From the NCBI RefSeq assembly GCF_002113885.1, contig NW_018480057.1, positions 301,208 to 365,207 of the forward strand: a DNA stretch of 64,000 nucleotides, given 5' to 3'. Below the pieces are notes generated by a model, which ran no database searches, was not told where the DNA came from, and was given only the letters and a program-made list of their open reading frames with translations. This DNA is from Mizuhopecten yessoensis. Its lineage: Eukaryota. Positions 7,139 through 30,019 of this stretch are shown piece after piece; position 1 is the first letter of the stretch, and every line of letters starts with the position of its first letter. The position numbers were made by a program, and so were the translations under genes.

Positions 7139-10100
7139 ATGGCAAACGTCGATTCGGATCGTGTTGATGATATCACACAGACAAAGCGTAAGTCATACAT
7201 GAATTAGTAATGTAACAATAATTGTACGTCTACTTTCATTTTCATTTTGTGCAGTGTATTGATGACCACTGGTGACTTCTACATCTATATATATACACCC
7301 TCTACTAGTTTAACTGGCATAACACAGTGTTGCACTGAACTCCATTGGCATATAAAGAAAAATCAATGTGTAGTAATGGCTACATATATATACTTACCTT
7401 GTGTCCCTAACTCCTGAGCATCTGTGAATCAATCATGCAAATTGCAATATAAAATGATCATATTTTAAATATCTTTATCTTAATATGTACATATGCATAC
7501 TTGTAACTTCTATTTTCTATATATGTAACTAGTTCCAGATATGCATTGTTTTATTGGTTAAATAAAAGCTCAATGAAATATAAACTTCATCTGTTTTACA
7601 ACAATTATGAAACAAGTTAATTTAGATTTGTCAACTTACTAAACCGTCTTGTTAGCCTGAATGGTAGTGTACAGGGGGTCTTTATGTTGGATAAAACTGG
7701 AGTGCCTGGAGAAAACCTTCAGTCAGGCAGATAACCCACATAGTGAGTGAGTACCTTTGAGTTCACATCTGTGAAAATTAGGACATCCGTGGGAAGGGCC
7801 TGTCCAGCGACAGTAGATCAACGTGATCGTATAGTAATTTTGGTTTTCCCCAAAACTACCAACAAACTGACCGGTGGCAATCCCCAAGAATCTCCTGCTG
7901 CGTCGATCCATCCTAGCTAGCCGTTAAAACGTGGCAAACAATATGTACATTAATAACGGTAATATATATATATATATAAGACAGAACAAAACTTACAATT
8001 GTAGAGAAAAGAAATAAATTTTACTAAACCTACATATTAGCCCCCACATTATATTTTGCATACCTGCCAAGTGACCTGATTTCGTCGGGTTACACCCGGG
8101 ATTTTAGCCCTTCACCCGCTTTTATAACTTCACCCGCCGGGTTACGATTTTGACCCGGATTTCGTCAATTTCACCCGTTTTCACCCGGAATCTTTTCGTA
8201 TATTAGAAGTTACCGAAGTCACTCGGAATTCTCTAGACTTTTCCATCCTCCTTCATAAGAAAGACGATCTATTTCCTGTTTCCGTTTCTCACCAACAGGT
8301 AAGTTGTGAGTTGTTTATATACGTACTAGAACTGTTTTTACAAATGTTTATATAAAGAACGTTGTTACTGAACTTGCCGACAAGTTATTAGTCAGGTTTT
8401 TAACGAATAATTGAGTTGTATTTACGTAGAATAGATCGTATTTTGAAGGTAACGTTATGTCTTCTTGAAGGAAGAAGTTTTTATCGGGACTTGCAGGTTC
8501 TACTACACGAATTGCCAAAAGAAAAGATAATTGTACACATATCAAATGTCATAGGAAAATGAGTTATAGTGTACAAAGTCCCGTGGTCGTGGACCAAACG
8601 CTGCATTCTGCACTCTAGTCAAAAACACGCACAGGCATTTGATGATTTGTTTCTGTCAATCAAAATGATCCTTACAATAAGAGTTCAAACCCTACTCGTA
8701 TAAAACTGATATTTTATATGAGAAGGGTGCAACTTCTTGTTGTCAGGACCATTTTCATTGACAGAAACAAAATGGTATTTTATATGAGCAGAATGTGACA
8801 TCTTATTGTCGGGACCATTTCAATTGACATAAAAAATGCCTGTGAAAACACAGTATCATATATATTATTATGAATTAATTTTATAAGTTGTGTTGTTGAC
8901 AAATCTTTTTATTTTTCAGCTTTGAATTTGGTATTGTGGATGAGGATCAGCTAGATCTGCTGGAAGAACAGTTCAATGAATGTAGAATGTAACTTTTACA
9001 TCATTAAAAAATTTAAGTTCTAATTTAATATCTATTTTTCTTATATTTGTTGCGAAAAAATCCGTCGCGCATTATGACCCTCTTTTTAATTTTCAAAAGA
9101 GGGTCATAACCCTCTTTCAGCATGTCCAGGGTTGGCAGGTATGATTTTGGTAAAATAAGGCCTGCAGATACTTTTAAATAGTCTACGATAATAACCACCC
9201 CATCCCGGTACACTGATATATGTTGAGTCAACAACTTTAAGCTTACCCTAATGTTCCCTAACTTGAGTGTACTGCTTTCAGTACATCGGTACTTGGTAGT
9301 GACTGTATCTTCCCACGACTCACCAATTTAATCTGGTCATCTCAAAAGCATTATACCAATGTAAACAAATAGACTAGCACTAGTGATAGCTGCTACTCGA
9401 GGGGAAGCATCTGCTGAACAAATAGCGCTGCCATACCTGTTTGGTTACTTTTAGGATGGTATATTTAATTAGGGAATACACAAAGACACAACAGTAAATA
9501 TAGAACAGTACTCAGGCTAATGACCCATTTTCCCACACTTGATTGTGAAGTCAAACCCAGGCTGTCGGTTAGTGAAAAAATAGTGCACTCTCTCTAATGC
9601 GCCGCCTGACCAGCCCAAGAGTTCAATAAAGGTATCCAATACGTTAATTATTAAACATTATTACAACACAAGTACTTTTATTATCATCTAATCACTGATA
9701 CACTATATAGCTAGCTGCAGTTGGTGAGATAAGTGGTTTATTTGCAGATGTACTACAGCAGTATGTCTTGGATAACCACAGGGAGGAATTGGTCCAGGTT
9801 TTATTGGAGGAAGATGAAGAAGATCACTACTGCATTTCTGTCCAGTAAGCATATCATTAGGATCGATTGTTTTGCGATATTTGAATGAATTTGACATCAC
9901 CATAAATAAAATACCATGATTTTTAGGAAAAAGAAATGTTAGCATCAAAATTCATGTCTGCATCAAATCTGACATGTAATTTTTTATAAATTATAATGTA
10001 CACTAATTTCAATTCATGAGAGTTCAAAGAAACCAAGCTCATTATTACTGATCAAAGCCAGGCTCTGTAATAATTATTGATCATGTCCTAATTAGCCACT

Positions 10101-13100
10101 GATATGTGTTATTATAGAAACTGAGGTAATTGCAAAGAAACTATTAGCTGCTTAATAATTTGTCAGTATTATACATTTTATTTATATTCATGCTGACTAA
10201 CACATATTTGCAGTATTAAATTTGCTTAAATAATGCATAACTAAATATAACAAAAAACAGGGATGTACATTTTATATTGATTATATTGGGCCTGGTGGCT
10301 TCTTTTATGATAAATATTCTTCCCCTGTCAAATTTTAATTGTTTTTCTCATGTTTAAAAATAAAATTATCTGTTACAAAAAAAATTAGGAAACAGGAATG
10401 TCCCTCTTGTTTAGATATGTAGGTGTAATAGGGAGTTTGAACTTGTAAATGATACGGTAAAATCACTGCAATAACAACACAACTTTCAGCGCATAGAAAA
10501 AATGAAATGCTTATATAATTACGATGTATCTAAATCTTTTGTACTCTTTCAGTGCTTTGTCCCTGTTTGAAAGTGACATGTCAATCTGCGACATGCTTCT
10601 TTCCCGGGCAGAGAAGCTGCTTCCTGTGTTTGATGCCGCCCTGGTGGAGGTCCAGACTAGCGTGATTGAGGACCATCCAGACAAAAATCAGATGGTAGGT
10701 TAGGAATTTTGTCCAGTTGTTGAGGCCTCATTCCAAAATGAAAATCTCATTGTATTTTCACAATTTCATTTTTTTTTTCCATTCAATTTTTGTTCATAAA
10801 AAAGTTTTGCATCCCTGCAAATGTAAATGATAGATTGGGAAAACATTCCTGATCTAAAGACATGAACATTTGAACAATGTTGAGTGTAACACAACACTAA
10901 TGCTACTCATACAAAATTTTAATTAATTTTCCTCTGACGTGTAAAATATAAAAATAATATAATAAATTCATTTTTAATATTGACTAACAACAAGAAGATG
11001 GCATAAAATCCGAACAAATTATTAATTTAATATTAATTACTATTGGCCAGCTGATTGCCAACACTAGAACATAAGCCTGTAGATAGCACACTGAAATGTC
11101 TGGGAATCCTTCACAATGTCTGCTGTATCTATATACGTGTTGATGCTCTAGAGTCTAAAGAGAAATATTCATGGAAGAGTGATGTCCTTACCTGTCTGTC
11201 CAGAACTGATCAGGACCAACTTGCCTCGAACCTCAGATGTTGGCAGTTTTCTCAGCATCAGTGGTAAGTATTTAAGCTACAACTTGCCATCCCCTTTGCA
11301 TCCCTGCGGAATATACTGTCAAGTGTATTTAAAAGTTTCTCTTAAAAGCTGATATATTTTTTTCTTTCAAAAGACAAAGTTTCACCAATTGAGTAACCAA
11401 TTGTGATAAGCGGATGGACCTATATATATATATATATACACACTGTACCACAAACACTTGACTTCAGACTTTGAGAAGGATCATATACTGATGTGAAGTA
11501 TCATTATGTAAAAATCAATTTCATCAAATTTATCAAGGACGTAATGGTTTGTAGTCCATATGTGTGGTAAGATATCATGGAATCAAGTTGAAGCCTTAGA
11601 GGTATTCTAACACAGGTACTGTGATCCGCACCACTGTGATGAAGATGCTGGAGTTTGAAAAGGAATACATCTGTACAAAGTGCCGATCTGTCATCTCTGT
11701 ACAGGTAGGTACAAAGTGCCGATCTGTCATCTCTGTACAGGTAGTAGGTACAAAGTGCCAATCTATCATCTTTGTACAATTTTTAGCTCACCTGCCCGAG
11801 GGCTAGTAAGCTTATGCCATGGTTCATTGTCCGTCTGTCAACTTTTCCTTTTAAAACGCTACTAGTCCTGAACAGCTTGGTGGATTTTGACTAAATTTGG
11901 CCTGGAGCATCCTTGGGCAAATGAGGCTCAATTTTGTATAAATAGAGGGTTGGGGGCAGAGGGGTTGGGCCCAATAAGGGAACTTGAAGTACATCTTTAA
12001 AATCCTTCTCATTTAATCTGATTGGAGGGATTTCAACGAAATTTTGTGTAGAGCACCCTTGGGCAAAGGGGACTCAATAATATATAAATGTAGGGTGTGA
12101 CCCCCAGGGGGCAGATCGGTTGGGCCAAATGGAGTGAACATAGTAATATATACAAAATCCTTCTTCTGTACCATTGAAGGTATTTAAAACACATTTTGTG
12201 TAGAGCATCCTTGGGCAAAGGAGACTATATTTGTATAAACAGAGGATGTGGCAGAAGGACAGGGCCTAATAAGGGAACTATAGGTAAACCTTTATAATCC
12301 TTCTCCTTTACTTTGATTGGATGGATTTCAACCAAATTTTGTGTATATCATCTTTGGATAAAGAGGACTCAATTTTGTGTAAATGCAGGGTTGCCTTTCA
12401 GGGGCTGAGGGGCAGGGCCCAATAGGGGAAATTGAGGTAAATGTTTAAAATCCACCCCATTTCATGAGGGCAGGAAAAAGGGACCCAATGAGAGATGGCT
12501 GTTGCTTAGAGACAGAGCCAATTTTTGAAAATAGTTGCGGTATTACATTTAATAAGAACATTTTCCCATGGTTGCTTTATTATCCAGGTGATTAATACAG
12601 GCCTTCTGGGCCTTTTATTTATTCAATTACATGTATCTCTTACTGTTGAATATAAAATATACTTTTGAAATTGTTAATCTAAGTGAAATTATGAGAACAA
12701 TTTTAGTTTGCGAAAATTTTCCATCACAGTGCCTTTCTACTCACATTTTTTTTATATGTAAATGAAGTTTTTTTTATATTTTTTTAATTTCAGGCAGATT
12801 TTGAGCAGTTTAATGCAGTTTCCAAACCCAGTAAATGTACCAATGAGATATGTAACTCCATCACTTTCTCTCCCCTCAGTGATGCAGGTAGGTGAATTTT
12901 CAGCAAATTACTACATCAGTTTAAGATGTAATGATTTATCATCCACACTATATGTACTTTGGAATAGATGTAAAATCATTTTCTTCAGTTGTGTTAAAAC
13001 ACATATTGCAATACATTTTACAGAATTACAGTTGTCTTAAATTTGGGCACCGATTATGATAAAAAATGCATAAGAGAAAAAGAAACTCAGAACTGATCTA

Positions 13101-16100
13101 TTGAACTGCCTATTCTACACTTCACTGATGTTGCTTTAACTTGATATCCAGAAAATATTTTAAATAATTTAAAAAAAAAAAAATCTCACAAGAGAAGAAG
13201 CTTCATGCCAGGAAAGTTCTTTAAGTTTATGAATTTATTTATTGCTATATTTTCTATATACTGCACACCTTAAAAAACAGCTTTGTAAATGGCACCTTTT
13301 AGCTTTATCATTGTCGCTATATATAAAACCATTAACTGAGGTTGCTTAGGTTAAAGATTTTGAAGAGTACTTATATACACCATCTTAAAGGTTAACCGTG
13401 ATACCTTTTTCTTTTTGAAATTTCGAGCCTTTTTATAAGTGTGATACACAGCAACTGAAGTGAAGAAACTGTCTCAGTTATGACTACCTTGATCAGGTAC
13501 ACAGCTATTGACGTGTAGAAACTGTCTAAGTTATTACTACCTTGATCAAGTACACAGCTATTGACCTGTAGAAACTGTCTAAGTAATGACTACCTTGATC
13601 AGGTACACAGCCACTGAAGTGTAGAAACTGTCTCAGTAATTAATACCTTGATCAGGTACACAGCCACTGAAGTGTATAAACTGTCTAAGTTATGACTACC
13701 TTGATCAAGTACACAGCTATTGACTTGTAGAAACTGTCTAAGTAATGACTGCCTTGATCAGGTACACAGCCACTGAAGTGTAGAAACTGTCTAAGTTATG
13801 ACTACCTTGATCAGGTACACAGCTATTGATGTGTAGAAACTGTCTCAGTAATGACGACCTTGATCAGGTACACAGCTAATGACGTGTAGAAACTGTCTAA
13901 GTTATGACTACCTTGATCAGGTACACAGCTATTGACGTGTAGAAACTGTCTAAGTAATGACTACCTTGATCAGGTACACAGCCACTGAAGTGTAGAAACT
14001 CGCTAAGAAATGACTACCTTGATCAGGTACACAGCCACTGAAGTGTAGAAACTGTCTAAGTTATGACTACCTTGATCAAGTACACAGCTATTGACGTGTA
14101 GAAACTGTCTAAGTAATGACTACCTTGATCAGGTACACAGCCACTGCAGTGTAGAAACTTTCTAAGTTATGACTACCTTGATCAGGTACACAGCTATTGA
14201 CGTGTAGAAACTGTCTCAGTAATGACGACCTTGATCAGGTACACAGCTATTGACGTGTAGAAACTGTCTAAGTTATGACTTCCTTGATCAGGTACACAGC
14301 TATTGACGTGTAGAAACTGTCTAAGTTATGGCTACCTTGATCAGGTACACAGCCACTGAAGTGTAGAAACTCGCTAAGAAATGACTACCTTGATCAGGTA
14401 CACAGCTATTGAAGTGTAGAAACTGTCTCAGTAATGACGACCTTGATCAGGTACACAGCTATTGACGTGTAGAAACTGTCTCACTAATGACGACCTTGAT
14501 CAGGTACACAGCTATTGACGTGTAGAAACTGTCTAAGTTATGACTACCTTGATCAGGTACACAGCTTTTGACGTGTAGAAACTGTCTCAGTAATGACGAC
14601 CTTGATCAGGTACACGTCAATAGCTGTGTAGAAACTGTCTAAGTTATGACTACCTTGAGCAGGTACACAGCCACTGAAGTGTAGAAACTCTCTAAGTAAT
14701 GACTACCTTGATCAGGTACACAGCCACTGAAGTGTAGAAACTCTCTAAGTAATGACTACCTTGATCAGGTACACAGCTATTGAAGTGTAGAAACTGTCTA
14801 AGTAATTACTACCTTGATCAGGTACACAGCTACTGAAGTGTAGAAACCGTCTAAGTAATGACTACCTTGATCAGGTACACAGCCACTGAAGTGAATAAAC
14901 TGTCTCAGTAATGACTACCTTGATCAGGATCACAGCCACTGAAGTGAAGAAACTGTCTCAGTAATGTCTTCCTTGATCAGGTACACAGCCACTGACGTGT
15001 AGAAACTTTCTAAATAATGACTACCTTGATCAGGTACACAGCTACTGAAGTGTAGAAACCGTCTAAGTAACGACTACCTTGATCAGGTACACAGCCACTG
15101 CAGTGTAGAAACTTTCTAAGTTATGACTACCTTGATCAGGTACACAGCTACTGAAGTGTAGAAACTGTCTAAGTAATGACTGCCTTGATCAGGTACACAG
15201 CCACTGACGTGTAGAAACTGTCTCAGTAAGGACTACCTTGATCAGGTACACAGCCACTTAAGTGTAGAGACTCTCTAAGAAATGACTACCTTGATCAGGT
15301 ACACAGCCATTGAAGTGTAGAAACTCTCTAAGTAATGACTACCTTGATCAGGTACGCAGCCACTGAAGTGTAGAAACTCTCTAAGAAATGACTACCTTGA
15401 TCAGGTACACAGCCATTGAAGTGTAGAAACTCTCTAAGTAATGACTACCTTGATCAGGTATACAGCTATTGACTTGTAGAAGCTGTCTAAGTAATGACTA
15501 CCTGGATCAGGTACACAGCCACTGAAGTGAAGAAACTGTCTCAGTAATGCCTTCCTTGATCAGGTACACAGCCACTGACGTGTAGAAACTGTCTAAGTAA
15601 TTACTACCTTGATCAGGTACACAGCCACTGAAGTGAAGAAACTGTCTCAGTAATGACTACCTTGATCAGGTTCACAGCCACTGAAGTGAAGAAACTGTCT
15701 CAGTAATGACTTCCTTGATCAGGTACACAGCCACTGACGTGTAGAAACTGTCTCAGTAATGACACTGTCTCAGTTATGACTACCTTGATCAGGTACACAG
15801 CTATTGAAGTGTAGAAACCGTCTAAATAATGACTACCTTGACCAGGTACACAGCCACTGAAGTGTAGAAACTGTCTCAGTAATGACTACCTTGATTAGGT
15901 ACACAGCCACTAAAGTGTAGAAACTGTCTCAGTAATGACTACCTTGATCAGGTACCCAGCTATTGAAGTGTAGAAACCGTCTAAATAATGACTACCTTGA
16001 CCAGGTACACAGCCACTGAAGTGTAGAAACTGTCTAAGTAATGACTACCTTGATTAGGTACACAGCTATTGAAGTGTAGAAAGCGTCTAAATAATGACTA

Positions 16101-19100
16101 CCTTGACCAGGTACACAGCCACTGAAGTGTAGAAACTCTCTAAGAAATGACTACCTTGATCAGGTACACAGCCACTGAAGTGTAGAAACTGTCTAAGTAA
16201 TGACTACCTTGATCAGGTACACAGCTATTGACATGTAGAAACTTTCTAAGTTATGACTACCTTGATCAGGTACACAGCTATTTATGTGTAGAAACTTTCT
16301 AAGTAATGACTACCTCGATCAGGTACACAGCCACTGACGTGTAGAAACTGTCTGAATAATTACTACCCTGATCAGGTACACAGCCACTGAAGTGTAGAAA
16401 CTGTCTAAATAATTACTACCTTGATCAGGTACACAGCCACTGACGTGGAGAAACTGTCTGAATAATTACTACCTTGATCAGGTACACAGCCACTGAAGTG
16501 TAGAAACTTTCTAAATAATGACTACCTTGATCAGGTACACAGCTATTGATGTGTAGAAACTTTCTAAGTAATGACTACCTTGATCAGGTACACAGCCACT
16601 GACGTGTAGAAACTGTCTAAATAATGACTACCTTGATCAGGTACACAGCCACTGAAGTGTAGAAACTGTCTAAATAATTACTACCTTGATCAGGTACACA
16701 GCCACTGAAATGTAGAAATTACCAGGAGGTTAAGGTACAGGAGCAGGTCCAGAAACTGGCGATGGGCACCATCCCCCGATCCATGTGGATTGCACTGGAG
16801 GACGACCTGGTGGACGTCTGTAAGGCAGGGGACGATGTCATCATCTGGTATGTTTAAAAATATGTCTGCAGTGTCTTGAATGCAAAAACCACCTGTTTAA
16901 CTGTTCATTCAGTGAAATATCTGACAGTAGTATTTGGCATGTGTTAATTACGTTTCCATTCACATTTGAACACAGAGGTCATGGAAAAAACAGAAACAAT
17001 TCCATTGTGTTGATGACCCTTCTGGTGGCAGGGACACTTCTTCAAAACTCTAAATTTGTTTTATATTCAACAAATGTTTTATGCCCCAACCCCTTCCATA
17101 AGTATGAGAGCATTCTCAGACCCGATACCATTTATTTGAAGTGTCTGACCCTTGTCCAAAGAACTGGTTATTTACAAAGAATACCTGATGTGCTGGGCTC
17201 TCAGAAAAAAAGAATTGTCTATACAAGATTTATAAAAGCTGGTTATGGTGTATTACTTGATCTATGACATTTGTTGAATAATATGTTTTTTTTATAAACT
17301 CTACATTGGGTACATTTCAAATTATATTGAAAATATTAATATTGAGGTTTGAATGGAAATTGTTTTTGCTGAGGCTGATATTGGACTGTATCTGACTTTC
17401 TCAGTGGAACAGTGCTAAGACGATGGAGATCTGTGTCTGTTGATGCCCGCTGTGAAATAGAGGTTGTGATGAAGGCAAACCATGTCTTAGTGACCAACAA
17501 ACAGAGGAACGCAGTGCTGGTCACGCAGGAGCTGGTGAGTCTAGATCACAGAATCTTGACCAGTGTGTTTGTTGTTGTTACGTAATTGATACACTTGGAG
17601 CACAGTACTGGTCACTCACAACAACTTTGTGGGTCACTCCAGATTGGTCACTCTCCACAGTACTAGTAAGTCACTTACGACTACAGTACTGATCACTGAG
17701 AACAGCTTTGCTGGTCACTTTGGACTGGCCACTCAACACAGTACTGGTCAGCCAGCACAGCAGTGTTGGTCACTCAGGGCAATGATATTGGTCAGGATAA
17801 AGCACTTATTACCCTTGACCACAGAACTGGTCATTCACAAAAAAATACTAGCCACTTTGAATAACAGTACTGGATAAAAAAAAGTAGATCTATGACATTT
17901 GTTGAAAATATATGAAAATGTTTTTTTTTCATAATCCCTACCATTTAGTACATTGGTTTTCAATTTTACAGAAGAATGAGATTGCCAGTTTTTGGGAGGA
18001 GCACAAAACTTGTCCACTGAAAGGTCGTAACAAGATTCTGGCCAGTCTGTGTCCTCAGGTGTATGGGTTGTATGTGGTCAAGCTGGCAGTGGCAGTGGTG
18101 TTGGCTGGAGGGGTACAGGTCAGTATAGATATTAATGGATGGTCAGCAATGTCCATTAAGGGTTATGCTACCTTATTAAAGACATGCACCTCCTTTACCA
18201 AAAGAGTTCAGCATTTAGGTTAACTTTGGTCAGATGTCCATCATGAAAGATAATACTAACTGATGATCTTTTGAAAATAGACAACATTAACACTCATATT
18301 TAATTTAACAAATTTAAAGAGAGAAAACTCAAATACAGAATCTCATATATATCATGTGGAAGGTTATCCTATAGCCTTAAATCTAACCCAAATCATCGGT
18401 ATAATGTTAAGTCATGTGGTAACATATAATTCTGTGCATGGAAATTTTCAACGCAAAATGTAGAGCATGGATGTGATAACTCTACAATGTACAAGTATTG
18501 ACTTAGAGGACATAAACATACCATGTTTCTACAGTAATTTCCAAGTGATTAAATAAGATGTTGCTCTAGTATTTTCACTGTCAATGTGTTGATATTTTCT
18601 AGACCTGTTGTTTTTGATATTTGTATATTTTACAGCGGATTGACGAGTCTGGAACTCGTGTGAGAGGAGAAATACACATGCTAATGGTAGGGGACCCAGG
18701 TAAGTGTATATGAATTGCAATTTATCAAGCAAGTCGTGAGATAATAAGGAAGGTGGCAAATGGAACAGGGGGCTTTATATTGAGGCTTTAGTGTAAACCA
18801 TAATCCAATAAAAAGTGCACAATACATTGCGATTCATAGGAAACAAAGACCTTCACTTCTGGGTCAAAAGTCAAATAAATGCAAAATTTAAAGCGAAATC
18901 TTATCTGGGTTGTAAATTTTAAACCATTTAAAAATATTTTTATGAGAATTGAATTATATCTGTATCACCCACAGAAGGTGTTCAATGTTCAGCTCTAGGT
19001 CAAAGGTTAAATAAGTGTAAAATTACGCATATTGTACTTTTGACCTAATACTAAAAGTTCTTTATCATTATAGACATTCCTCCTATTGTGATGAAGAATA

Positions 19101-22100
19101 AAGTTCTGTGCGAAAAGCCAATGTTTTGGTAGTATACTGATTTTAACACCTTGCTAATCATTGCTTTGGACTGCTTGGAATTATTAGTTGAAATTTTGTT
19201 ATCCAAGGTCTGTAATTAATATTTGACATATAAAGTATCTCTCGGTAGAATTTTAGAATCTATGGTGTTGGGGGTACTTAAAACTTTTTTTTCAAATGAT
19301 AGAAAATAACTTTATACAAGTATTTGGAATACAACTATCTAGAAAGAATTTGTGTTTCATGGGTTCTGGACCCCTATTTATAGAAAGATCATGACTAGCA
19401 AGGGCATTAAACATCCTAAACATAGTCTTGGTTTCTTTTCTTGAAAATGTTTTGTCCTGAATAAAAAGGTTACCTTGTTACATTCAGTAAGTATTGTGTT
19501 TTAATGTTTATGTTTTGTTGACTCAATAATAACAGGTACTGGAAAATCACAGTTCATGAAGTACGCAACAAAAATTACACCTCGGTCTGTACTGACAACA
19601 GGAATTGGGAGTACAAGTGCAGGTCTGACTGTCACAGCGGTCAAGGTAGAGTAACTGTACTGACGACAAGTATAGGGGAGTACTAGTGCAGGTATGACTG
19701 TCACAGCAGTCAAGGTAGAGTAACTGTACTTACCACAAGTATAGGGGAGTACTAGTGATCTCACTGTCACAGTGGTCAAGGTAGAGTAACTGTACTTACC
19801 ACAAGTATAGGGGTGTCCTAGTGATCTCTCTGTCACAGCAGTCAAGGTAGAGTAACTATGCTGACCACAAGTATAGGGGTGTCCTAGTGATCTCACTGTC
19901 ACAGCGGTCATGGTAGAGTAACTGTACTGACCACAAGTGTAGGGGTGGCCTAGTGCTCTCACTGTCACAGCGGTTAAGGTAGAGTAACTATACTGACTAC
20001 AAGTATAGGGAGTACTAGTGCAGGTCTCACTGTCATAGCAGTCAAGGTAGAGTAACTGTACTTACCACAAGTATAGGGGTGTCCTAGTGATCTCTCTGTC
20101 ACAGCAGTCAAGGTAGAGTAACTATGCTGACCACAAGTATAGGGGTGTCCTAGTGATCTCTCTGTCACAGCAGTCAAGGTAGAGTAACTGTACTGACCAC
20201 AAGTATAGGGGAGTACTAGTGCAGGTCTCACTGTCATAGCAGTCAAGGTAGAGTAACTGTACTGACCACAAGTATAGGGGAGTACTATTGCAGGTCTCAC
20301 TGTCATAGCAGTCAAGGTAGAGTAACTGTAATGACCACAAGTATAGGGGAGTACTAGTGCAGGTCTCACTGTCATAGCAGTCAAGGTAGAGTAACTGTAA
20401 TGACCACAAGTATAGGGGAGTACTAGTGCAGGTCTCACTGTCACAGCGGTCAAGGTAGAGTAACTGTACTGACCACAAGTATAGGAAGTACTAGTGCAGG
20501 TCTCACCGTCACAGCGGTCAAGGTAGAGTAACTGTACTGACTACAAGTATAGGGAGTACTAGTGCAGGTCTGACTGTCACAGCAGTCAAGGTAGAGTAAC
20601 TATACTGACCACAAGTATAGGGGAGTACTAGTGCAGGTCTGACTGTCATAGCAGTCAAGGTAGAGTAACTGTACTGACCACAAGTATAGGGGAGTATTAG
20701 TGCAGGTCTGACTGTCACAGCAGTCAAGGTAGAGTAACTTTACTGACCACAAGTATAGGGGAGTACTAGTGCAGGGCTCACTGTCACAGCGGTCAAGGTA
20801 GAGTAACCGTACTGACAATAAGTATAGGGAGTACTAGTGCAGGTCTCACTGTCAAAGTGGTCAAGGTAGTGTAACTGTACTGACCACAAGTATAGGGAGT
20901 TCTAGTGATCTCACTGTCACAGTGGTCAAGGTAGAGTAACTGTACTGACAATAAGTATAGGGAGTACTAGTGCAGGTCTCACTGTCAAAGTGGTCAAGGT
21001 AGTGTAACTGTACTGACCACAAGTATAGGGAGTTCTAGTGATCTCACTGTCACAGTGGTCAAGGTAGAGTAACAGTACTGACCACAAGTATAGGGAGTAC
21101 TAGTGATCTCACTGTCACAGTGGTCAAGGTAGAGTAACAGTACTGACCACAAGTATAGGGAGTACTAGTGCAGGTCTCACTGTCACAGTGGTCAAGGTAG
21201 TGTAACTGTACTGACCACAAGTATAGGGAGTGCTAGTGATCTCACTGTCACAGTGGTCAAGGTAGAGTAACAGTACTGACCACAAGTATAGGGGAGTACT
21301 AGTGCAGGTCTCACTGTCACAGCGGTCAAGGTAGAGTAACTATACTGACCACAAGTATAGGGAGTACTAGTGCAGGTCTCACTGTCACAGCGGTCAAGGT
21401 AGAGTAACTATACTGACCACAAGTATAGGGGTGTCCTAGTGATCTCACTGTCACAGTGGTCAAAGTAGAGTACCTGTACTGACCACAAGTATAGGGAGTA
21501 CTAGTGCAGGTCTCACTGTCACAGCGGTCAAAGTAGAGTAACTATACTGTCCACAAGTATAGGGGTGTCCTAGTGATCTCACTGTCACAGCAGTCAAGGT
21601 AGAGTACCTGTACTGACCACAAGTATAGGGAGTGCTAGTGCAGGTCTTGCTGTCACAGCAGTCACGGTAGTGTACCTGTGGTCAGTAACAGTATTGACCA
21701 TAGTTATAGGGTGTTATGGTGGTAAGTACTGTCACAGTGGTCAAGTTAGAATCGGTGTCCTAGTGATCTCACTGTCACAGCGGTCAAGGTAGAGTAACTG
21801 TACTGACCACAAGTATAGGGAGTGCTAGTGCAGGTCTTGCTGTCACAGCAGTCAAGGTAGTGTACCTGTGGTCAGTAACAGTATTGACCATAGTTATAGG
21901 GTGTTATGGTGGTAAGTACTGTCACAGTGGTCAAGTTAGAATCACAAAATTGACCAATGGTCAAGGTATAATGCATTGTTGAGATAAAATGTCATATTAG
22001 CTAGAGATTGTTTTACAGACCTAGATAGAACATTTATTTTGTTTATGAGGATTGTATCTTGTAAAGAATGAATAGCATTTTGGTCTGAATTTAATCAATT

Positions 22101-25100
22101 CTCGATTTAATAAACATAATCTAATACCTGTTGTTTATCATAATTGATTTATCTCAGTTCAAGAAAATCCCAATGCATATCACCCAGCGGCAGACAGATC
22201 AATCATTTGCAATCAACAATAAGTGCTTTATCATTTTTTGTCACCATCCTTGATACTCCAGGGGTTGAAGGCACAAAGATAGCAGTTTGATTGGTTTCAG
22301 GTAACAAAAACCTGACCAATCGCTAAGCTGATACCTGTCCTTTGAAGATTACAGAGGGGTGACATCCAACTTCAAAGCTAGTCAATTTTTACCGTTACAC
22401 AGCCGCGAGATTCGTTTGATGTACATCAAAGAATCGTACTAGTCTTCTTGTCTCATCTACAAGGTGGCGCACACCGAGCCTTCAATTTTGCTATGACATA
22501 CTGGAATATGGAGGATGTGATGAATCAAGAGGTTTTATTTAATTCTACTTGAGCAAAAGAGTTCCAACCTGTTCTCAGTGCATTTATTGCAGTCACTACA
22601 GTGACCTGTCTTTACGTTAGTTATCCTGGTTTATCCAAATCAGGAAAAAGAAATTTGATTTTTGAAAGTTTATTCATTTGTTTTCAATTTTCAAAGTGTT
22701 CATTTGTTTTTTACAGATTAAATTAATGATAATCAGTAATTTCACAAGTGTTTAAACAAAAGGAAAAAAATACTATATGATGTATGTTTATTGCAGGACG
22801 GTGGGGAGTGGCAGCTGGAGGCAGGAGCCTTGGTGCTGGCTGATGGCGGGCTTTGTTGTATTGATGAGTTTAACAGTATCAGGGAACACGACAAGGCTAG
22901 CATCCATGAGGCTATGGAACAACAGACCATCAGTGTAGCCAAGGTCAGGGTCATAGTCAATCTAACCTTTATCTGTGGTCAAGGTCAGGTTCAAAGTAAA
23001 TCTAACTTCTAACCTTTATCCATGATCAAGGTCAGGGTTATAGTCAATCTAATCTTTATCTGTGGTCAAGGTCAGGTTCAAAGTAAATATAACCTCTAAC
23101 CTTTATCCATGATCAAGGTCAGGGTCATAGTCAATTTAATCTTTATGTGTGACCAAGGTCAGGTTCAAAGTAAATCTAACCTCTATCTGGATCTGGGGTC
23201 AAGGTCTTATGTAACCTTTATATGTAGCCAATGTCAGCATCTCAGGCAATGTAATGGCAATGGAACATTTTGCCAGGGTCATTGTCAAGGTCGTTGACTT
23301 GAACTTTTAACCTCAAAGTCAGGGTCATAGGCAACACAATGTTTAGCCAGAGTCCATTCCAATTCTTTACTCGTACAAGTTTTTACAACTTATGGCATAA
23401 GGTCAGGGTCAAAGGCATAAGGTCAGGGTCAAAGGCATAAGGTCAGGGTCAAAGGCATTGTTACTTCTCACTTGACACAATGATTTTCATCCCTTTACTG
23501 AAGCCAACGGCACAGTCAGAGGCAAGTTTACATTTTCCTGAAGTCAGTGATAAGGCCTATATTATGTAAGCTTTAGTTTTCCTGATTTTACTGATATTGC
23601 AGCCTTTAACTTTATGTAAACCAAAGTCTGGTTCTTTGTGATAGTATCTTGTATCTTGAATGTTACATAAATTTACCAAAGACATTCTCAATTGCAGTAA
23701 ATGAAAGCCATTCATCATTAATGAACACGAACATTGAAATATCACATATTTCATATCATATATATATATATATCATGTATTTGGAATCTAATCTTTGCAG
23801 CATATATACTTGGGTATTGTTATGTGGCTTCACAGAGCCTGATCAAATAGTTACATAGACCTTCATTTAGTTATGTCGACATACAAGGTCCTGATAGTTT
23901 GTTAACTTGTCCGTTATGATAATCCTTGACAAAAGTCATATAATTTTACCACTTTATCTACGATTGTGGTTAGGGTCATTTATTTGACAGCCTTCCTGTC
24001 CTTTATGATAATCCTTGACAAAAGTCATATAATTTTACCACTTTATCTACGATCGTGGTCAGGGTCATTTATTTGACATCCTCCCACATTGTTGGAGTTG
24101 AATTTCATTCAGTTCACTTAATTTTTTTCTGTATGATAACTTTAATCGCAGGCCGGAATGGTGTGTAAACTGGACACCAGAACAACAATACTAGCGGCCA
24201 CCAACCCCAAGGGACATTACGACCCAAACGAGGTAACTACAGCTATCTGCTACTGATGTGTACTTAAAGAACTCTAATTCATATAATTCCTGTGATATGC
24301 TTAGTTTGAAACTTTTATTCCTTCAGTCTAAATAAAAAAGTAAAGTTTAATTATTCCCTGATCTGAACAGAGTTATGTCCCTTTGTTTATTTTTTGATAC
24401 TGAAGTTTTGTCTGAAGGCGTGGAACTATGGATTTCTTGCAATTTTTTTCTAATATGACTTTATAAGGCTTCTTTGTATTTTCCAAGTACACCTTAAAAA
24501 TAAAATGAGGTAAAACGGCATGGCAACTCCTTTTGTATACAATCTCAATAGCTGACTGTTCGGCGTATAGGATTGTTTGTGTGTAAAGTTAAACTTTGAT
24601 ATTACATATTTCCAAACTGATATATATCAGCCACACTCTTTTTCACACCAAGATCACAGAACAAGCAGAGGGAATATTTTGATATTTTTCACGAGTGTCT
24701 ATAATCAGTTTACCATTTTATTGTAAAACCTCATATTTCAGTTGTAAAAAAGTTACATTATTTTCCTAATTGAGAAAGCACCTGTCTTGTGTTGACAGTC
24801 ACTGTGTGTGAATGTAGCTCTAGCCAGTCCACTCCTGAGTCGATTTGACCTTGTCCTTGTCCTTCTGGACACTCAGAATGAGGACTGGGATAGGGTCGTG
24901 TCCAGCTTCATCCTTGAAAACAAAGACCCACTCGGTAAGTGGTTAAAGCAGAGGTATGCCATGTAACTGTCAGACCATGATAGATAAGATACTGGTAAGT
25001 TATTGGTTTTGATATACACAGACTCACTCAATCAATATTTATGGCGTCATCATCTGTGCAAACTTTAATCTTCCTTAAAGTTTCTACCCATACCTTCAGT

Positions 25101-28100
25101 ATCAAATACTTGTATAGTTTCATTTTCAGCCAAAATCTGAATTTTCAGATGGCTGCCAGTGGCCATCTTTGATCTTGTAAAAAAAAAAACATGGTACTGT
25201 GTGTTCTTTATATCAATTACCTTCTCAAGTTTTCTTTTGACCAAATCTGAAAGTCAGCATGGGGCAGGAGACACATCAGTTCATTGGAGTATTTGTCTTT
25301 TTGAATAAACAAAATAACAGCATCTATAAATGTTTATGTTGGGTTGCTGTGGAATGCAGTTGAATGTTAAAAATGTGGTTCAATAGTACTTAAATCTTAT
25401 TTTACTGAAAACAAGAGGGAAGATACCAGATTATTTTTCAAAAATGACAACAAGTCTGTAAGAACAGGGTCACAAACAGAGAAAACAGACTATTTCAGCC
25501 ACCCAATCATGTTTGTTATTTATTACAGAAAGTTCTAAAAGTGAGAGTGATCTCGGATGTCGGTAGTGTCAGGTTTTGTTGTATTTTATACCTTCAGGTG
25601 ATATAAACATGAAGCATTTATGGGGGATGGAGAAAATGCAGGCTTACCTGTCTCTGATCAAGTCTATAGACCCCCAGCTCACTGACGATTCTAGCAGGTA
25701 AGAAAACAGATTCATTTTATTGTATTGGAGAGAATGGATTAACTTTTTCCTTTGTGTTTTATATCAAAAGAGATGTAGGCGGTGAAGGAAGTTGTAATGA
25801 CTGGGAGTCAAAGTCATAATGAAAAGGTCTATTGGACCTTGACCTCAAGTACCAAAATACAGGTACATGTACATCGTCAGTGTTGGGGTATCAAAAAAGA
25901 ACCTGCTTAGAGTTAAATCCGGTTGTTTTTGATGTAGGGTGTTAAGGGAGTACTACCGAGCTCAGAGAGGAGCAGACGACAGGAACGCGGCCAGGACCAC
26001 CATGAGGCTCCTACAGAGTATGATCAGGCTGTCACAGGGTAGGTTCGTGAGTTGGTAAACTGGAATAAATACAGCAATATTTGCTCACACCTGTGGGGTG
26101 CAGATCAATATTTTGAGGAATACATGTTATTCAACAAAATCTGTGGTTGGTTTGAAGTTGTCAGGTATCAATTATATCAATCTGTTAAATCCTGAGGACA
26201 ATACATTTTAGAACAGATCTGCTAATGTTTAGTATGTCGCTGGTAGCAATGAGTTTTGGTTATATGTAGAAAAAAAGGAGATTAGAAAAACTCTCTAAGA
26301 ATTAATACATACTCCCTTTAACTACAATCAACATAAAAGTGTGAAAAAATTTAAGAGTATGAATATATATATAGCAGAGGTAGTGTTATCCACATGACAA
26401 CTTTTAGACAAAAAATATGTTTGTGGAAATTTGAAGACTTCTTTGATAATTTAAATGATTATTTTTAGCTCACCTAGCCCAAAGGGCCATGTGAGCTTAT
26501 GCGGTACTGTGGCATTCGTTCGTCATCTTTTTCTTTTGAACCACTTCTTCTGAAGAACTGGAGGACCTTGGGTCATGATACTTGGCCAGTGGGTACTTTG
26601 GATAGAGTGCTATAAAGTTTCCTCATTAAAATGACCTTGACCTAGTTTCAAGGTCACAGGAGTAAAATATGTTATAAACTTCCAACAACAATATCTTAAG
26701 AACGATTAGGTCTAGAGTGATGATACTTGGGTATGTTATGTAGGGGTCAAATGTCAACGTGGGTTAAAATTCAAATTTCAAATTTCAAACGACAATATCT
26801 GAAGAACCATTAAGAACTTCTGGGCCTCTTGTTCTACTTTAATTTCTCTTAAACAGTTTTTAAAAATCTGATAGGTAGATTAACATTCTTTGAATAAAAC
26901 TGGTATGCTAACTTCAGAGAATGCTGAAATAGAAAAAAAAAACAGCTATAGAAAAAAGTTCAATACAGAAATTAGAAGAAAATAATTCTTAATTGATATG
27001 GCAAATTTACATTCAGAGGTAAACCATGACTTTCTGTTTTGTAGCCCACGCTCGTCTGATGTTTCGAGATACAGTCTCAGTCCAGGACGCTGTGCTGGCT
27101 GTTACTCTTATGGAGTCCTCCATGCAGGTACTGAAATTGAGGGGACATTTATGTGTCCTTACTACAGCAGAAGCTAACCACTAGTCCAATTAATGTACTG
27201 AGAGGCATTTGTTGAACATTGGTCATTGTTACTCAAGGTCCTGTCTGCTTGTTTTTTGTGCTCATTTGCTAGGTTATGTTGACAGGATGCTGAGTTGCTT
27301 GGTGATGTTATGTTGACAAGTTGCTTAGTGGCTTATTGATGGGTGTATATGTTTGTATATATTCTGACATTGGTGCTTAGTTTCTACATAGTGTTTGTTT
27401 ATGTTCACAGGGGGCTGCGTTGCTAGGCGGGGTTAATGCCCTTCATACCTCCTTCCCTGAGGATGCAGAGGAAGAGTACAAACTACAAGGTAACCCACTA
27501 GGATAGAAGGTCATGTAAAAGTTGATTTTACCAGAGAGAATGCTACACTTATTTATAATCTTATATTGTAAGTCAAATATACACCTTTTCCAAGTACACA
27601 GTGAAATGGAGATCTTCGATACTCTAGGGGTTCAGCTCACTTTCGCTCTCTGCACCCCTGGAATAAGTCGTAGCAAAATTGAAGGCATGCAGCTAGCTAT
27701 TTGGTTGGTCTTTGGTAAAAATACAACTGACCAATCGCTAGACAGATACATATCCTTTTAAGATTACAGAGGAGTGACACCCGACTTCAAGCCAGTCAGT
27801 TTTACCGTTACTTAACCAACAGATTCTTTAGATGTACAACAAATGCACACTGAGCCTTTGATTATGCTATGACATATTCCATGATATTATTATTATTGAT
27901 GGACGAGAGCACTGCTGGGTCTATGTGTACAGCATTATAATATTTACAATCACTGTTCATTTCCTTGTGTGGTGAAGTGCAGTGAAGTACATAACTTTGA
28001 TTGTCTATTTCTGTGTTTAGTTAAGTATAGATTACCATTATTTTCCATTTCTGTGTTCCAGCTGAGATGGTGCTGAACAGACTTAATCTGCATGACCTAC

Positions 28101-30019
28101 TGGATCAGGAAATGGCACGAATTGAGCAGGAGAGACTCTCAGGTGGGACAGGGTCCCAGGGAGGTGGCAGTTCCCAGGGCCCAGGAAATGTTGGAACATC
28201 ACATTCGGGTCAAGGGTCAATATCACATACAGGAAATTCGGAAGTAGATCAGTCAAGGTCGCTAATAAGTGATATTTCAGTCTTACACCAAAGTCAACCA
28301 CTGAGAGAGACACACCAAAGTTTTAGAACTGAGCCAACCAGAGAAGTGAATGTTGAGGCTCGTAGTCACCAAGAGAAAGAACTACGTCAAAATGTCAGGA
28401 TCAAGCGAACTATGGATATGAGAGCTGACAGCCATGAAGTAAAGTTACCAATTGATAATTCAGCTCGATCAGACGTAGAAAGTGTTGTCATGGAAATAGG
28501 ATTACAGACCAAAAGTGGAGGAAACAGGAAATCTTCTTCTGATTCAGACGGCCATGACATCTCTCTCACAGATATGTTGAACACCAGTGTAGAAGATAGC
28601 CAATCCAGTATAGGTACTTTTGTTGCTCCCTCTGTAGGACAGACGCCAACATTATGGAGTCCTAGACCTCAAACATCCACACAGTTGTCCCAGTCAGCCC
28701 CGAGGGACCACAGTGAATGTCCTAATATTAGTTTGTCCAATATGTCTGATATCTCAGAGTCCCAGGACCAAAGTGCTCTGTCACAGAGAAAAGAAATAAT
28801 GCCTCGCCCATCTATAACACATGCAATTCAAAACCGTCTTCAGGAAGAGAAAAACCGGAAAATTGCTTCCAAGCCAAAAGCTGGAACATCCGAGTCAGAT
28901 GTTTTGGATATTTGTGACAAGGATCACCAAGCTAAACTTGTGTATGTGAAAGATACAGTTATGGAAAAGCCTAAAGCTGGATCAAAGAAACTGGTGTCAA
29001 AACTACGAAGTAAAATAGAAGCATCTAAAAGAGAGTTCACTTCATCAGACGCTTCATCAAAATCTGTTGAAAAACTTGACGAGAATGCCCCTAAACATTC
29101 AACAGGAAGTCATGGACCATCTTCAAAAGTACAGACATGCAAAGACACTTCTCTGGAACAAAAAAATAACAAGAAAATTTGGGACGCCAACTGTGACAGT
29201 AGTTATCATCGAGTGTCAGACAAAACCATGTCCAAGTTACAAAGATTTATGTTTGATTCATCTTCAGATTCATCGGCAGAGAAAGAGGTCGGAGATTCTG
29301 AAATAATTGTGGACGACAGCCTTCTATCAGAGGAGTCTGTAGTGGTTGATAACGGCGATAAAACTGGACATAAAAGGAAGCGCAGCGGCCAGGACAGTGG
29401 AATGTCTGAAAGCATGCTTTCAGGTCACCTCTGGACGGACAAACTTGAACAATCATTGCAAAGTGATATCTCAGACTCACAATCAAGTGATGCTGACGGA
29501 TCATTGGGATCATCAACAAACAAACTGAAAATTGTAGAAAGTTCTAACAAAAAAGTAAAGTTGTCTAAAGACAACTCTTGTGTGAAAACCAGTGAAAATT
29601 GCCCAGAGCAATATCCTAAAGATGTTAATTCAAATAGAGTGTGTAAGGAATTAAATATCAACAAATTCAAATTCACTCGTAAACCCATGTCATGCTTGTC
29701 TGTGCAAGCTCCCCATACTGACAGTAGTAAAGTTCAGATAGATAGATCATGTGACAGGAATAAAAGTGCAATGACCTCCCAAAAGTTGGGGTCATCACAA
29801 ACATCGATATCATCACAACCCTCCTCCAGCTTTCTCAAACCATTGCAAACAAAAAACAGTGCATCCAGTCCATCACAAACAGCCACCAGCATGCCCCAAT
29901 CAGCGCTAGCAAGTCCTGCCTGGCTTACCAGCCTGAACACAAAGAAGTCGTCCCCCATGTTTACTGTGCCCAGCTCTGAAGACAATGATTTGGACGATCT
30001 CGACCTGGAACTTGACTGA
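7139..30019 (+). CDS. MCM9: DNA helicase MCM9 (19 coding exons, ~1299 aa)
   Basis: Exons: 7139-7187, 9721(or 9715/9748)-9844, 10553-10694, 11152-11263, 11616-11704, 12794-12887, 16694-16847, 17405-17534, 17972-18118, 18636-18699, 19536-19645, 22797-22943, 24152-24232, 24799-24934, 25598-25697, 25938-26038, 27045-27127, 27411-27489, 28062-30019; all GT-AG and in phase. Motifs: LPVCPEL, C4 zinc finger, Walker A GDPGTGKSQ, Walker [21 protein letters not shown], Arg finger LLSRFDL, MCM9-type ALHTSFP, long S-rich C-terminal tail. Exon 1 and the exon-2 acceptor are the least certain parts. Confidence 0.96.
7650..7770 (-). mobile_element. Degenerate SINE core fragment
   Basis: aaaactggagtgcctggagaaaacc resembles the ggaaaccggagtacccggagaaaacc core common in invertebrate SINEs; boundaries approximate. 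Confidence 0.4.
8059..9143 (+). mobile_element. Non-autonomous hAT-like DNA transposon (1085 bp) in MCM9 intron 1
   Basis: Perfect 12-bp TIRs CATACCTGCCAA (8059-8070) / TTGGCAGGTATG (9132-9143); 6-bp TSD ATTTTG (8053-8058, 9144-9149); repeated subterminal (t)cacccg motifs at ~8090-8190; internal donor caggtaagt (~8296) and an acceptor plus short reading frame [23 protein letters not shown] (8921-8992). Confidence 0.85.
8630..8844. mobile_element. MITE nested in the hAT-like element
   Basis: Ends CACAGGCATTT / AAATGCCTGTG with extended imperfect inverted arms; 8-bp flanks aaaacacg / aaaacaca (7 of 8 identical). Confidence 0.7.
11673..11779 (+). repeat. 3 copies (36-39 bp) of MCM9 exon-5 3' end plus donor
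   Basis: gtacaaagtgccgatctgtcatctctgtacag|gtag at 11673 (exonic), 11709 (identical) and 11748 (diverged). Confidence 0.95.
11780..12617 (+). mobile_element. Helentron/HINE (DINE-1/pearl-like) non-autonomous element with internal tandem repeats
   Basis: Starts TTTTTAGCTCACCTG; ends CAGGTG...aggccttctgggcctt (subterminal inverted repeat plus 3' hairpin); internal diverged ~170-180-bp repeats. Confidence 0.75.
13444..16718 (+). repeat. 53-bp tandem array (~61 units) made of the MCM9 intron-6/exon-7 acceptor junction
   Basis: Unit ctgtctaagtaatgactaccttgatcag|gtacacagccactgaagtgtagaaa; period 53 (gatc at 13491, 13544 ... 16688). The last unit is the true acceptor (exon starts 16694, [12 protein letters not shown]). 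Confidence 0.97.
17511..17875 (+). repeat. Decayed repeats resembling MCM9 exon-8 3' end
   Basis: Exonic gcagtgctggtcacgcagg recurs in the intron as cagtactggtcac, cagtactgatcac, tgctggtcac, cagtgttggtcactcagg and cagaactggtcat. Confidence 0.6.
19587..21966 (+). repeat. 65-69-bp tandem array (~33-35 units) made of the MCM9 exon-11 3' end plus donor
   Basis: Unit ctgtactgaccacaagtatagg(g)gagtactagtgcaggtctcactgtcacagcggtcaag|gtagagtaa matches the last ~59 nt of exon 11 ([19 protein letters not shown]) plus the first 9 intronic nt. Confidence 0.97.
22246..22506. mobile_element. Interspersed repeat, copy A (MITE-like)
   Basis: Colinear with 27600-27880 (shared ctgaccaatcgcta, aagattacagag, ttttaccgttac, tgctatgacata). 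Confidence 0.7.
22940..23460 (+). repeat. Repeats seeded on the MCM9 exon-12 donor (CAAG|GTCAGG)
   Basis: caaggtcagg at 22940 (true), 22980, 23027, 23067, 23114 and 23154 (alternating 40/47-bp spacing, 87-bp dimer); 20-bp ggcataaggtcagggtcaaa x3 at ~23394-23453. Confidence 0.85.
23914..24085 (+). repeat. 89-bp tandem duplication
   Basis: ttatgataatccttgacaaaagtc...agggtcatttatttgaca at 23914 and 24003. Confidence 0.85.
26462..26833 (+). mobile_element. Second Helentron/HINE-like element
   Basis: Starts TTTTTAGCTCACCT, ends TGGGCCTCTTGTT; terminal structure like 11780-12617. Confidence 0.7.
27600..27880. mobile_element. Interspersed repeat, copy B (MITE-like)
   Basis: Similar to 22246-22506; internal inverted arms gtcgtagcaaaattgaaggc / gcctttgattatgctatgac. 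Confidence 0.7.

What the first reader, a model, noticed from the sequence alone, without database searches (positions are those of the whole stretch)
11673..27440. Splice-junction-seeded tandem repeats: a recurrent process amplifying exon-intron boundaries into introns
Seen: at about 6 of 36 MCM9 splice sites, the flanking intron is made of tandem copies of the junction or adjacent exon end. These are the exon-5 donor (x3), exon-7 acceptor (x~61), exon-8 end (decayed), exon-11 donor (x~33), exon-12 donor (x6+) and exon-18 acceptor (x2, decayed); the EMI gene exon-3 acceptor shows the same. The units are unrelated to one another (36, 53, ~67, 40/47 and 44 bp). Each array extends into the intron, the functional site is the exon-proximal copy, and copies range from identical to nearly erased. 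Inference: a general, ongoing mechanism duplicates DNA at splice junctions (e.g. transcription/R-loop- or repair-associated slippage, with exon-ward expansion removed by selection), and the spliceosome must ignore dozens of near-perfect decoy sites. This would be a route to satellite birth, intron growth and new exon/intron formation. I do not know of it being described as a system, but I cannot search the literature.
Basis: partly seen in the sequence, partly recalled or inferred. Interest (0 to 1): 0.9.

Follow-up and report, generated by a model that had tools for sequence, protein, structure and literature searches.

The report
Exon-edge minisatellites ("mirages") in scallop MCM9
Several introns of a scallop DNA-repair gene are filled with head-to-tail copies of the gene's own splice junctions, a kind of repeat already named "mirages" in amphioxus; the same gene in eleven other marine invertebrates shows such repeats two to four times more often than random local duplication predicts, for a reason not yet settled.

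Summary
The window is Yesso scallop (Mizuhopecten yessoensis) TOP3B-MCM9 plus two EGF-repeat genes. Four MCM9 arrays span a splice junction (E5 donor 36 bp x3, E7 acceptor 53 x61, E11 donor 65-69 x~34, E12 donor 40/47 x6+). The E18 acceptor has decayed copies, as does one EGF-gene acceptor; E8 is only a weak exon-end echo. The E5 duplicate leaves its signature in reads of two animals. The structure is known: amphioxus "mirages" (PMC3087553, PMC3902484), mechanism called unclear there. This scan has noted it in many other windows of this genome. Added here: 10 of 11 other genomes carry junction-spanning arrays in MCM9/TOP3B, mostly with different units; 13 of 46 arrays versus 3.0 expected (4.3x), falling to 2.2x against the flanking 100 nt. 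Breakpoints fall anywhere around the junction with 0-7 nt microhomology, so there is no sign of splicing-primed or cDNA origin. Intron interiors turn over fast while exon-anchored arrays persist across species. Best reading: ordinary small tandem duplication, filtered by selection and preserved by the exon anchor; a modest formation bias at exon edges is not excluded. Nearly all decoys give premature stops. No intron was gained.

The parts
7139..30019 (+). MCM9 gene, 19 exons (7139-7187, 9748-9844, 10553-10694, 11152-11263, 11616-11704, 12794-12887, 16694-16847, 17405-17534, 17972-18118, 18636-18699, 19536-19645, 22797-22943, 24152-24232, 24799-24934, 25598-25697, 25938-26038, 27045-27127, 27411-27489, 28062-30019)
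   Evidence: P0157 maps exon by exon with GT-AG introns; Pfam MCM on exon 12; RNA contigs join exons 2 and 3 at these sites
11673..11778 (+). Exon-5 donor mirage: 36-bp unit x3; true donor after 11704, one intact decoy after 11740 (in frame, would add 12 aa, no stop); a high-copy dispersed repeat starts right behind it
13445..16718 (+). Exon-7 acceptor mirage: 53-bp unit x61; true acceptor before 16694; 57 decoy acceptors, 35 with an identical 15-mer, every one giving a premature stop; absent from Ylistrum and Argopecten
17501..17860 (+). Exon-8 end and a degenerate ~20-22-nt intron repeat resembling it; no copied splice site; weak
19587..21943 (+). Exon-11 donor mirage: 65-69-bp unit x~34; true donor after 19645; 32 decoy donors, 24 with an identical 9-mer, all behind an in-frame TAA two codons into the intron; same unit register in Ylistrum
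22940..23458 (+). Exon-12 donor mirage: 40/47-bp units x6+ with decayed descendants (incl. 20-bp x3 at 23394-23458); true donor after 22943; 9 decoys, all premature stops; homologous decayed repeats in Ylistrum and Argopecten
27273..27341 (+). Two decayed 34-bp copies of the exon-18 acceptor; one decoy AG 125 nt upstream of the true site (27411), frameshift and stop
60494..60671 (+). Exon-3 acceptor mirage of the second EGF-repeat (EMI/MEGF-like) gene: ~44 bp x4, decayed; true acceptor before 60659

Best explanation
These are mirage minisatellites made by ordinary local duplication and kept by the exon. Step 1 (inferred): small tandem duplications of about 25-110 bp arise throughout genes of minisatellite-rich invertebrate genomes, by fill-in and end-joining at staggered breaks or by slippage at a few nt of microhomology. 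Step 2 (pattern shown, cause inferred): those wholly inside constrained exons are purged; those spanning a junction are tolerated because the exon-side copy rebuilds the exact junction and the extra copy falls into the intron. Step 3 (inferred, from known minisatellite behaviour): unequal exchange and slippage expand some to tens of copies. Step 4 (partly shown): intron interiors are deleted and replaced quickly, but a seed whose first copy is the exon edge cannot be deleted or drift far, so anchored arrays last and re-expand; this gives much of the 2-4x excess. Step 5 (inferred): the spliceosome picks the exon-side site by exon definition, since decoys lack the rest of the exon and a nearby partner site; occasional decoy use mostly yields premature stops cleared by nonsense-mediated decay. 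The arrays have no function of their own.
For: Exon share of the unit is spread evenly from 0.05 to 1.0, mean 0.51, in 20 junction arrays: no fixed breakpoint. Young duplicates show 0-2 nt excess match; sister-species comparison suggests 6-7 nt microhomology for scallop E5 and Mytilus intron 2. Small duplications with this anatomy are a common mutation class (PMC8355091). Only 20% of M. californianus intron DNA aligns to M. galloprovincialis, while most 100-nt intron edges are 50-90% covered. Arrays shared between sister taxa are nearly all junction-derived (scallop introns 11 and 12, Mytilus introns 2 and 6); the Ylistrum exon-11 array has the same register. The excess falls from 4.3x to 2.2x when only the flanking 100 nt are the control. 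The loosely constrained last exon holds 4 arrays in 18 kb, all in frame: 0.22/kb, about 0.6/kb after frame correction, versus 0.16/kb in introns and 0.91/kb at junctions. 99 of 100 counted decoys give a premature stop. Amphioxus mirages do not disturb splicing.
Against: Young duplicates (2-3 copies, >=90% identical) are themselves enriched: 7 of 8 versus 2.65 within 100 nt of a junction outside M. yessoensis (P=0.002). Survivorship should act least on these, and a half-constrained first copy would lengthen detectability only about 1.2x (my estimate). One interior minisatellite seed is also shared between scallops (TOP3B intron 7). Counts are small, come from two housekeeping genes, and splice-site choice at decoys was not measured.
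Confidence: 0.58

Rival explanations
1. Formation bias at exon edges: breaks or nicks that seed duplications are 2-3x more frequent within about 50 bp of a junction or in exon DNA (nucleosome edge, gene-body methylation repair, polymerase pausing or R-loops during co-transcriptional splicing). Survivorship adds to it. This is the weak form of the first reader's idea.
For: Residual 2.2-2.7x excess against flanking intron; young duplicates 2.6-3.5x against flanking intron and 6x against whole introns; in both Saccostrea species the only 25-109-bp intronic array in MCM9 is a young junction duplicate, at different junctions; present in bivalves, a gastropod and a hemichordate.
Against: No fixed breakpoint; no AG|GT preference (donors 8/13 versus 130/211, acceptors 1/7 versus 30/217); last-exon density is of similar order once frame is allowed for; nothing here touches chromatin or R-loops; other scan notes on this genome report no excess.
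Confidence: 0.28
2. A splicing- or RNA-templated mechanism copies the junction (spliced cDNA, cleaved 5' exon used as primer, lariat-guided repair). This is the strong form of the first reader's idea.
For: Only the excess itself; donors outnumber acceptors 13 to 7 (not significant).
Against: Units contain intron sequence and not the next exon, so spliced RNA is not the template; a splicing intermediate would fix one breakpoint at the splice site, but offsets range from 4 to 99 nt.
Confidence: 0.04
3. The arrays are selected: decoys tune MCM9 output through unproductive splicing and decay, or the AG|GT units of the 53-mer act as recursive-splicing points.
For: Exon-11 and exon-12 arrays persist across scallop lineages; nearly all decoys lead to stops; each 53-bp unit reads AG|GT.
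Against: Different species carry arrays at different junctions and lose them freely (Argopecten lacks E11; M. galloprovincialis keeps only a remnant at intron 2); stops are expected by chance and by purifying selection; the donor half of the 53-mer (GTACAC) is far from consensus; a 3.8-kb intron needs no ratchet.
Confidence: 0.06
4. The excess is an artefact of assembly or of my null model (repeat-rich genomes with short introns, transposon-swollen introns, detection bias).
For: The source assembly dates from short-read times; copy numbers of the long arrays are unverified; with long transposon-type units included the excess weakens (16 of 106 versus 8.8, P=0.011).
Against: E5 duplicate signature in reads of two animals; 56 of 60 distinct 53-mers; homologous arrays in other species' assemblies; excess holds without the entropy filter, at five score/period settings, in introns under 600 nt (8 versus 2.9) and in five later-fetched genomes alone (4 versus 1.0, P=0.015).
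Confidence: 0.04

Closest known systems
Amphioxus 'mirage' minisatellites (Adh3, globins BflGb6/9, TnC, PGBD5; Ebner et al. 2010 PMC3087553; Pavelitz et al. 2013 PMC3902484; named by Canestro et al. 2002, which I could not read)
   Same: Tandem copies spanning an exon-intron boundary, at donors and acceptors, unrelated units of 10-160 bp, many keeping AG/GT, normal splicing retained, proposed as a route to intron gain, origin called unclear.
   Different: Here in molluscs and a hemichordate; arrays reach 61 copies and 3.3 kb; an excess over random is measured; persistence across species is shown. Length polymorphism and somatic instability were not tested here.
Human internal tandem repeats at exon-intron boundaries (De Grassi and Ciccarelli 2009, PMC2812944); F7 intron 7 and IFI6 minisatellites (named in other scan notes, not checked); CBS 31-bp VNTR (from memory)
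   Same: Minisatellite units overlapping splice sites that can offer alternative sites.
   Different: Human cases are sporadic or in recent paralogs; here about 4% of junctions (17 of 422 outside the scallop) of two single-copy housekeeping genes carry one.
Intron gain by tandem genomic duplication of AGGT-containing exon segments (reviewed in PMC3443670)
   Same: Local tandem duplication with the extra copies spliced out.
   Different: That makes a new intron inside an exon; here old introns grow and no new position appears.
Small tandem duplications from staggered breaks with fill-in and end-joining (PMC8355091)
   Same: Size under about 100 bp, little microhomology.
   Different: Shown in mammalian cells; no link to splice junctions; only inferred as the seed here.

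Membership tests
Amphioxus-type mirage minisatellite | Head-to-tail minisatellite whose unit spans an exon-intron boundary of the host gene | tested here: met
   E5, E7, E11, E12 and EGF-gene exon 3; E18 copies detached from the site; E8 not met
Amphioxus-type mirage minisatellite | Both 5' and 3' boundaries are duplicated; units unrelated, about 10-160 bp | tested here: met
   13 donor and 7 acceptor arrays, units 26-151 bp, in 10 species
Amphioxus-type mirage minisatellite | Many copies keep GT/AG signals that could act as cryptic sites | tested here: met
   57, 32, 9, 1 and 1 decoys
Amphioxus-type mirage minisatellite | Regular splicing is not disturbed | tested here: inconclusive
   Annotated protein P0157 uses the exon-side sites; a 1864-nt RNA contig runs on 1467 nt past exon 3 without breaking at exon 5, but contigs drop rare forms and those joints were not displayed
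Amphioxus-type mirage minisatellite | Length instability between alleles and in somatic cells | not testable with these tools
   Only short-read contigs were offered and the reads tool refuses long repeats; between species copy number varies (36-mer x26 versus x6 in Mytilus)
Intron gain by tandem genomic duplication | A new intron position appears inside an ancestral exon | tested here: not met
   Same 18 intron positions in three scallops, two mussels, S. echinata and abalone
Intron gain by tandem genomic duplication | Duplication centred on an AG|GT proto-splice site | tested here: not met
   AG|GT no commoner at junctions with arrays than without
Recursive (ratchet) splice sites | Acceptor directly followed by a strong donor and used stepwise in a very long intron | not testable with these tools
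   53-mer reads AG|GTACAC, weak donor, 3.8-kb intron; needs nascent RNA
Transposon-borne satellite | Unit is part of a dispersed element, unrelated to the host gene | tested here: not met
   Units match the host's own coding exon ends; the E12 core 8-mer is common in bivalve repeats but its donor context is conserved in three scallops

The most novel reading that the evidence does not exclude
Small tandem duplications form 2-3 times more often at exon edges than in the adjoining intron across molluscs and other marine invertebrates, through a chromatin- or transcription-linked lesion; mirages would then be a general, mutation-driven class that supplies a sizeable share of intronic minisatellites and of intron growth, and a natural large-scale test of splice-site choice among identical competing sites.
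Probability: 0.28. Interest if true: 0.7.

Novelty: new member of a known kind. Interest (0 to 1): 0.38.

Why it matters
The structure is known but its origin was left open in amphioxus, and I found no paper reporting it in molluscs or measuring an excess (nine searches of an incomplete library). Finding it at about 4% of junctions in 11 of 12 genomes turns anecdotes into a countable mutation class whose cause (formation bias versus survivorship) can be tested with existing population data. Arrays with dozens of identical donors or acceptors are also natural versions of duplicated-splice-site experiments, and they mislead read mapping and gene prediction. If only survivorship is at work, it is a tidy but modest result on how intron turnover shapes minisatellites.

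Tried and rejected
A sliding-anchor test with intron-interior controls gave only about 2x (15 versus 7.8 in scallops, P=0.014; 7 versus 5.6 in other bivalves, not significant), because controls included edges of the arrays themselves and transposon repeats; I replaced it by an array-based null and report both. cDNA or splicing-intermediate origin: rejected, units hold intron and have no fixed breakpoint. AG|GT preference: none. Intron gain: none. Candidate exon 8920-8981: not in P0157; the start is at 7139. Ylistrum 31-mer in intron 17 as a homologue of the E18 copies: not significant. The 78-bp (33306-38289) and 38-bp (58148-59696) arrays do not span an annotated junction. Rfam: no hit. A search for further scallop MCM9 proteins gave only three. 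Canestro 2002 and a PNAS paper on introns from tandem arrays were not held. One search's window-wide statistic had a wrong exon anchor and is superseded. As the operators asked, window proteins were searched exon by exon by reference; the joined-model search was left out; exons were joined only inside local scripts to check the reading frame, and full-length searches used database proteins P0010 and P0157. The window has no N.
Full report
Identity and gene model. An exon-7 search and follow-up look-ups identified MCM9. The Mizuhopecten yessoensis protein P0157 matches the window's exons at about 99-100%, and the window is identical over 18.7 kb to scaffold NEDP02076730.1 of GCA_002113885.2. 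MCM9 has 19 exons with GT-AG introns. TOP3B lies head to head on the minus strand and two EGF-repeat genes follow. About 22% of the window is tandem repeat.

The observation. Four MCM9 arrays span a junction and extend only into the intron: E5 donor (36 bp x3), E7 acceptor (53 bp x61), E11 donor (65-69 bp x~34) and E12 donor (40/47 bp x6+). Two decayed copies of the E18 acceptor lie 70-140 nt upstream of it. The second EGF gene has four decayed copies of its exon-3 acceptor. E8 has only a 17/19-nt echo of the exon end in a degenerate intron repeat, without a copied splice site. In the window 5 of 14 intronic arrays span a junction against 1.45 expected (P=0.009, post hoc). DNA contigs from the source run and from an independent animal both stop at 11702, the end of the last unique 31-mer before the E5 duplicate, so that duplicate exists in reads of two animals. 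The 53-mers are 56 distinct of 60, unlike an assembler's over-expansion. Copy numbers of the long arrays remain unverified.

Decoys. Intact decoys number 57 (E7; 35 identical over 15 nt), 32 (E11; 24 identical over 9 nt), 9 (E12), 1 (E18) and 1 (E5). All give a premature stop except the E5 decoy, which would add 12 residues in frame. The annotated protein uses the exon-side sites. RNA contigs join exons 2 and 3 as modelled, and one runs 1467 nt past exon 3 without a break; rare decoy use cannot be seen in contigs. That exon definition and nonsense-mediated decay explain the tolerance is inference from established splicing biology.

Other genomes. I fetched MCM9 from Ylistrum, Argopecten, two Mytilus, two Saccostrea, Pinctada, Mya, Haliotis, Lingula and Ptychodera, with TOP3B in the scallops. 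All but Lingula, whose introns are short and hold no arrays, have at least one junction-spanning array: 17 at 422 junctions, mostly with different units at different junctions. Null: drop each unit uniformly on the gene with arrays collapsed, excluding wholly exonic positions. Leaving out M. yessoensis and M. galloprovincialis (shared event), 13 of 46 arrays of period 25-109 span a junction against 3.0 expected (4.3x, P about 3e-6). Against only the flanking 250, 150 or 100 nt the ratio is 2.7, 2.4 and 2.2 (P<=0.0006). It holds without filters and in short introns; with long transposon-type units it weakens to 16 of 106 versus 8.8 (P=0.011). A cruder anchor test gave about 2x in scallops and nothing significant in other bivalves. 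Two housekeeping genes are a small sample, and MCM9 was chosen because of the scallop.

How they form. The exon share of the unit runs evenly from 0.05 to 1.0, units hold intron rather than next-exon sequence, and AG|GT junctions are not favoured. This argues against cDNA or a splicing intermediate as template or primer. Young duplicates show 0-2 nt excess match; comparison with sister species suggests 6-7 nt of microhomology at scallop E5 and Mytilus intron 2. This fits ordinary small tandem duplication by end-joining at staggered breaks or by slippage (PMC8355091); the enzymology is inferred.

Why junctions. Survivorship has direct support. Between two Mytilus species only 20% of M. californianus intron DNA aligns, while most intron edges are largely kept. 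Arrays shared by sister taxa are nearly all junction-derived: scallop introns 11 and 12, Mytilus introns 2 and 6; the Ylistrum exon-11 array has the same register as the window's, with decayed copies next to the exon and a homogenised block further in. The three scallops are unresolved in my tree, so I do not order these events. The loosely constrained last exon holds four arrays, all in frame (two probably one Mytilus event), about 0.6/kb after frame correction against 0.16/kb in introns and 0.91/kb at junctions: exon-anchored DNA in general looks richer than intron interior. Against pure survivorship, young duplicates are enriched too (7 of 8 versus 2.65 within 100 nt), which leaves room for a real formation bias at exon edges. 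I cannot separate the two with these data.

What is known. Notes of other agents in this scan pointed to amphioxus mirages, and I checked the papers. Ebner et al. 2010 describe minisatellite-like duplications of intron-exon boundaries at both 5' and 3' ends in globin genes and cite Adh3; units 10-160 bp; splicing undisturbed; mechanism unclear; intron gain proposed. Pavelitz et al. 2013 add PGBD5 and TnC. Human boundary repeats are covered in PMC2812944 and intron gain by duplication in PMC3443670. The scallop arrays meet the structural definition of mirages; instability and undisturbed splicing were not fully testable. No new intron position was found. The scan has many first-reader notes of the same pattern elsewhere in this genome, and follow-ups disagree on the excess (none versus 2-3x); my cross-species count favours 2-4x.

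Limits set by the operators. Window proteins were searched exon by exon; the joined-model search was left out. The reads call avoided the long arrays. No N stretches were involved.

Verdict. Most likely neutral duplication plus selection and exon anchoring (0.58); a modest mutational bias at exon edges is the live alternative (0.28). Interest 0.38.

Noticed in passing
window 33306-38289: 5-kb array of a 78-bp unit (x64) between genes; each unit has a branch-point-like stretch and an AG on the plus strand, and a possible unannotated exon starts near 38428. No junction link shown.
   Followed up: partly
window 58148-59696: 38-bp x41 array starting 23 nt after the exon-2 donor of the second EGF gene; adjacent to, but not spanning, the junction.
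   Followed up: partly
window 11779-12620: High-copy dispersed repeat (very high contig depth) inserted directly behind the third E5 copy; similar starts at 26465 and elsewhere; looks like a bivalve non-autonomous element (from memory).
   Followed up: no
window 8920-8981 and 8280-8299: Exon-like stretch in MCM9 intron 1 with an open frame that fits onto exon 2, and an upstream donor-like site; not in P0157; overlaps a dispersed repeat; possible alternative 5' end.
   Followed up: partly
window 254-6900 region / L005, L006, L011, L012: TOP3B and MCM9 are head to head about 250 nt apart in three scallops; the same neighbours occur in abalone and Lingula: an old bidirectional pair of genome-maintenance genes.
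   Followed up: no
L009 intron 2 (acceptor near 5745): M. galloprovincialis keeps about 16 nt of exon-derived sequence just 12 nt upstream of the acceptor, a remnant of the 56-bp array seen in M. californianus.
   Followed up: yes
L010 38197-46606: Mya arenaria has an 8.4-kb repeat block beginning with copies of the exon-12 donor.
   Followed up: partly
window 703-1365 and L005 4217-5709: TOP3B intron 7 holds a decayed repeat in M. yessoensis homologous to a 28-bp x53 array in Ylistrum, not junction-derived: interior seeds can persist too.
   Followed up: yes
window 16680-16693: The exon-7 acceptor lacks a clear pyrimidine tract, and its last 14 intron nt are identical in Ylistrum.
   Followed up: partly
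window 31040-32230: Decayed reverse-transcriptase-like (LINE) fragment, judged by eye from the sequence.
   Followed up: no
window 45740-45769 and 46539-46568: Two similar 30-nt micro-exons in the first EGF gene, probably a whole-exon duplication.
   Followed up: no
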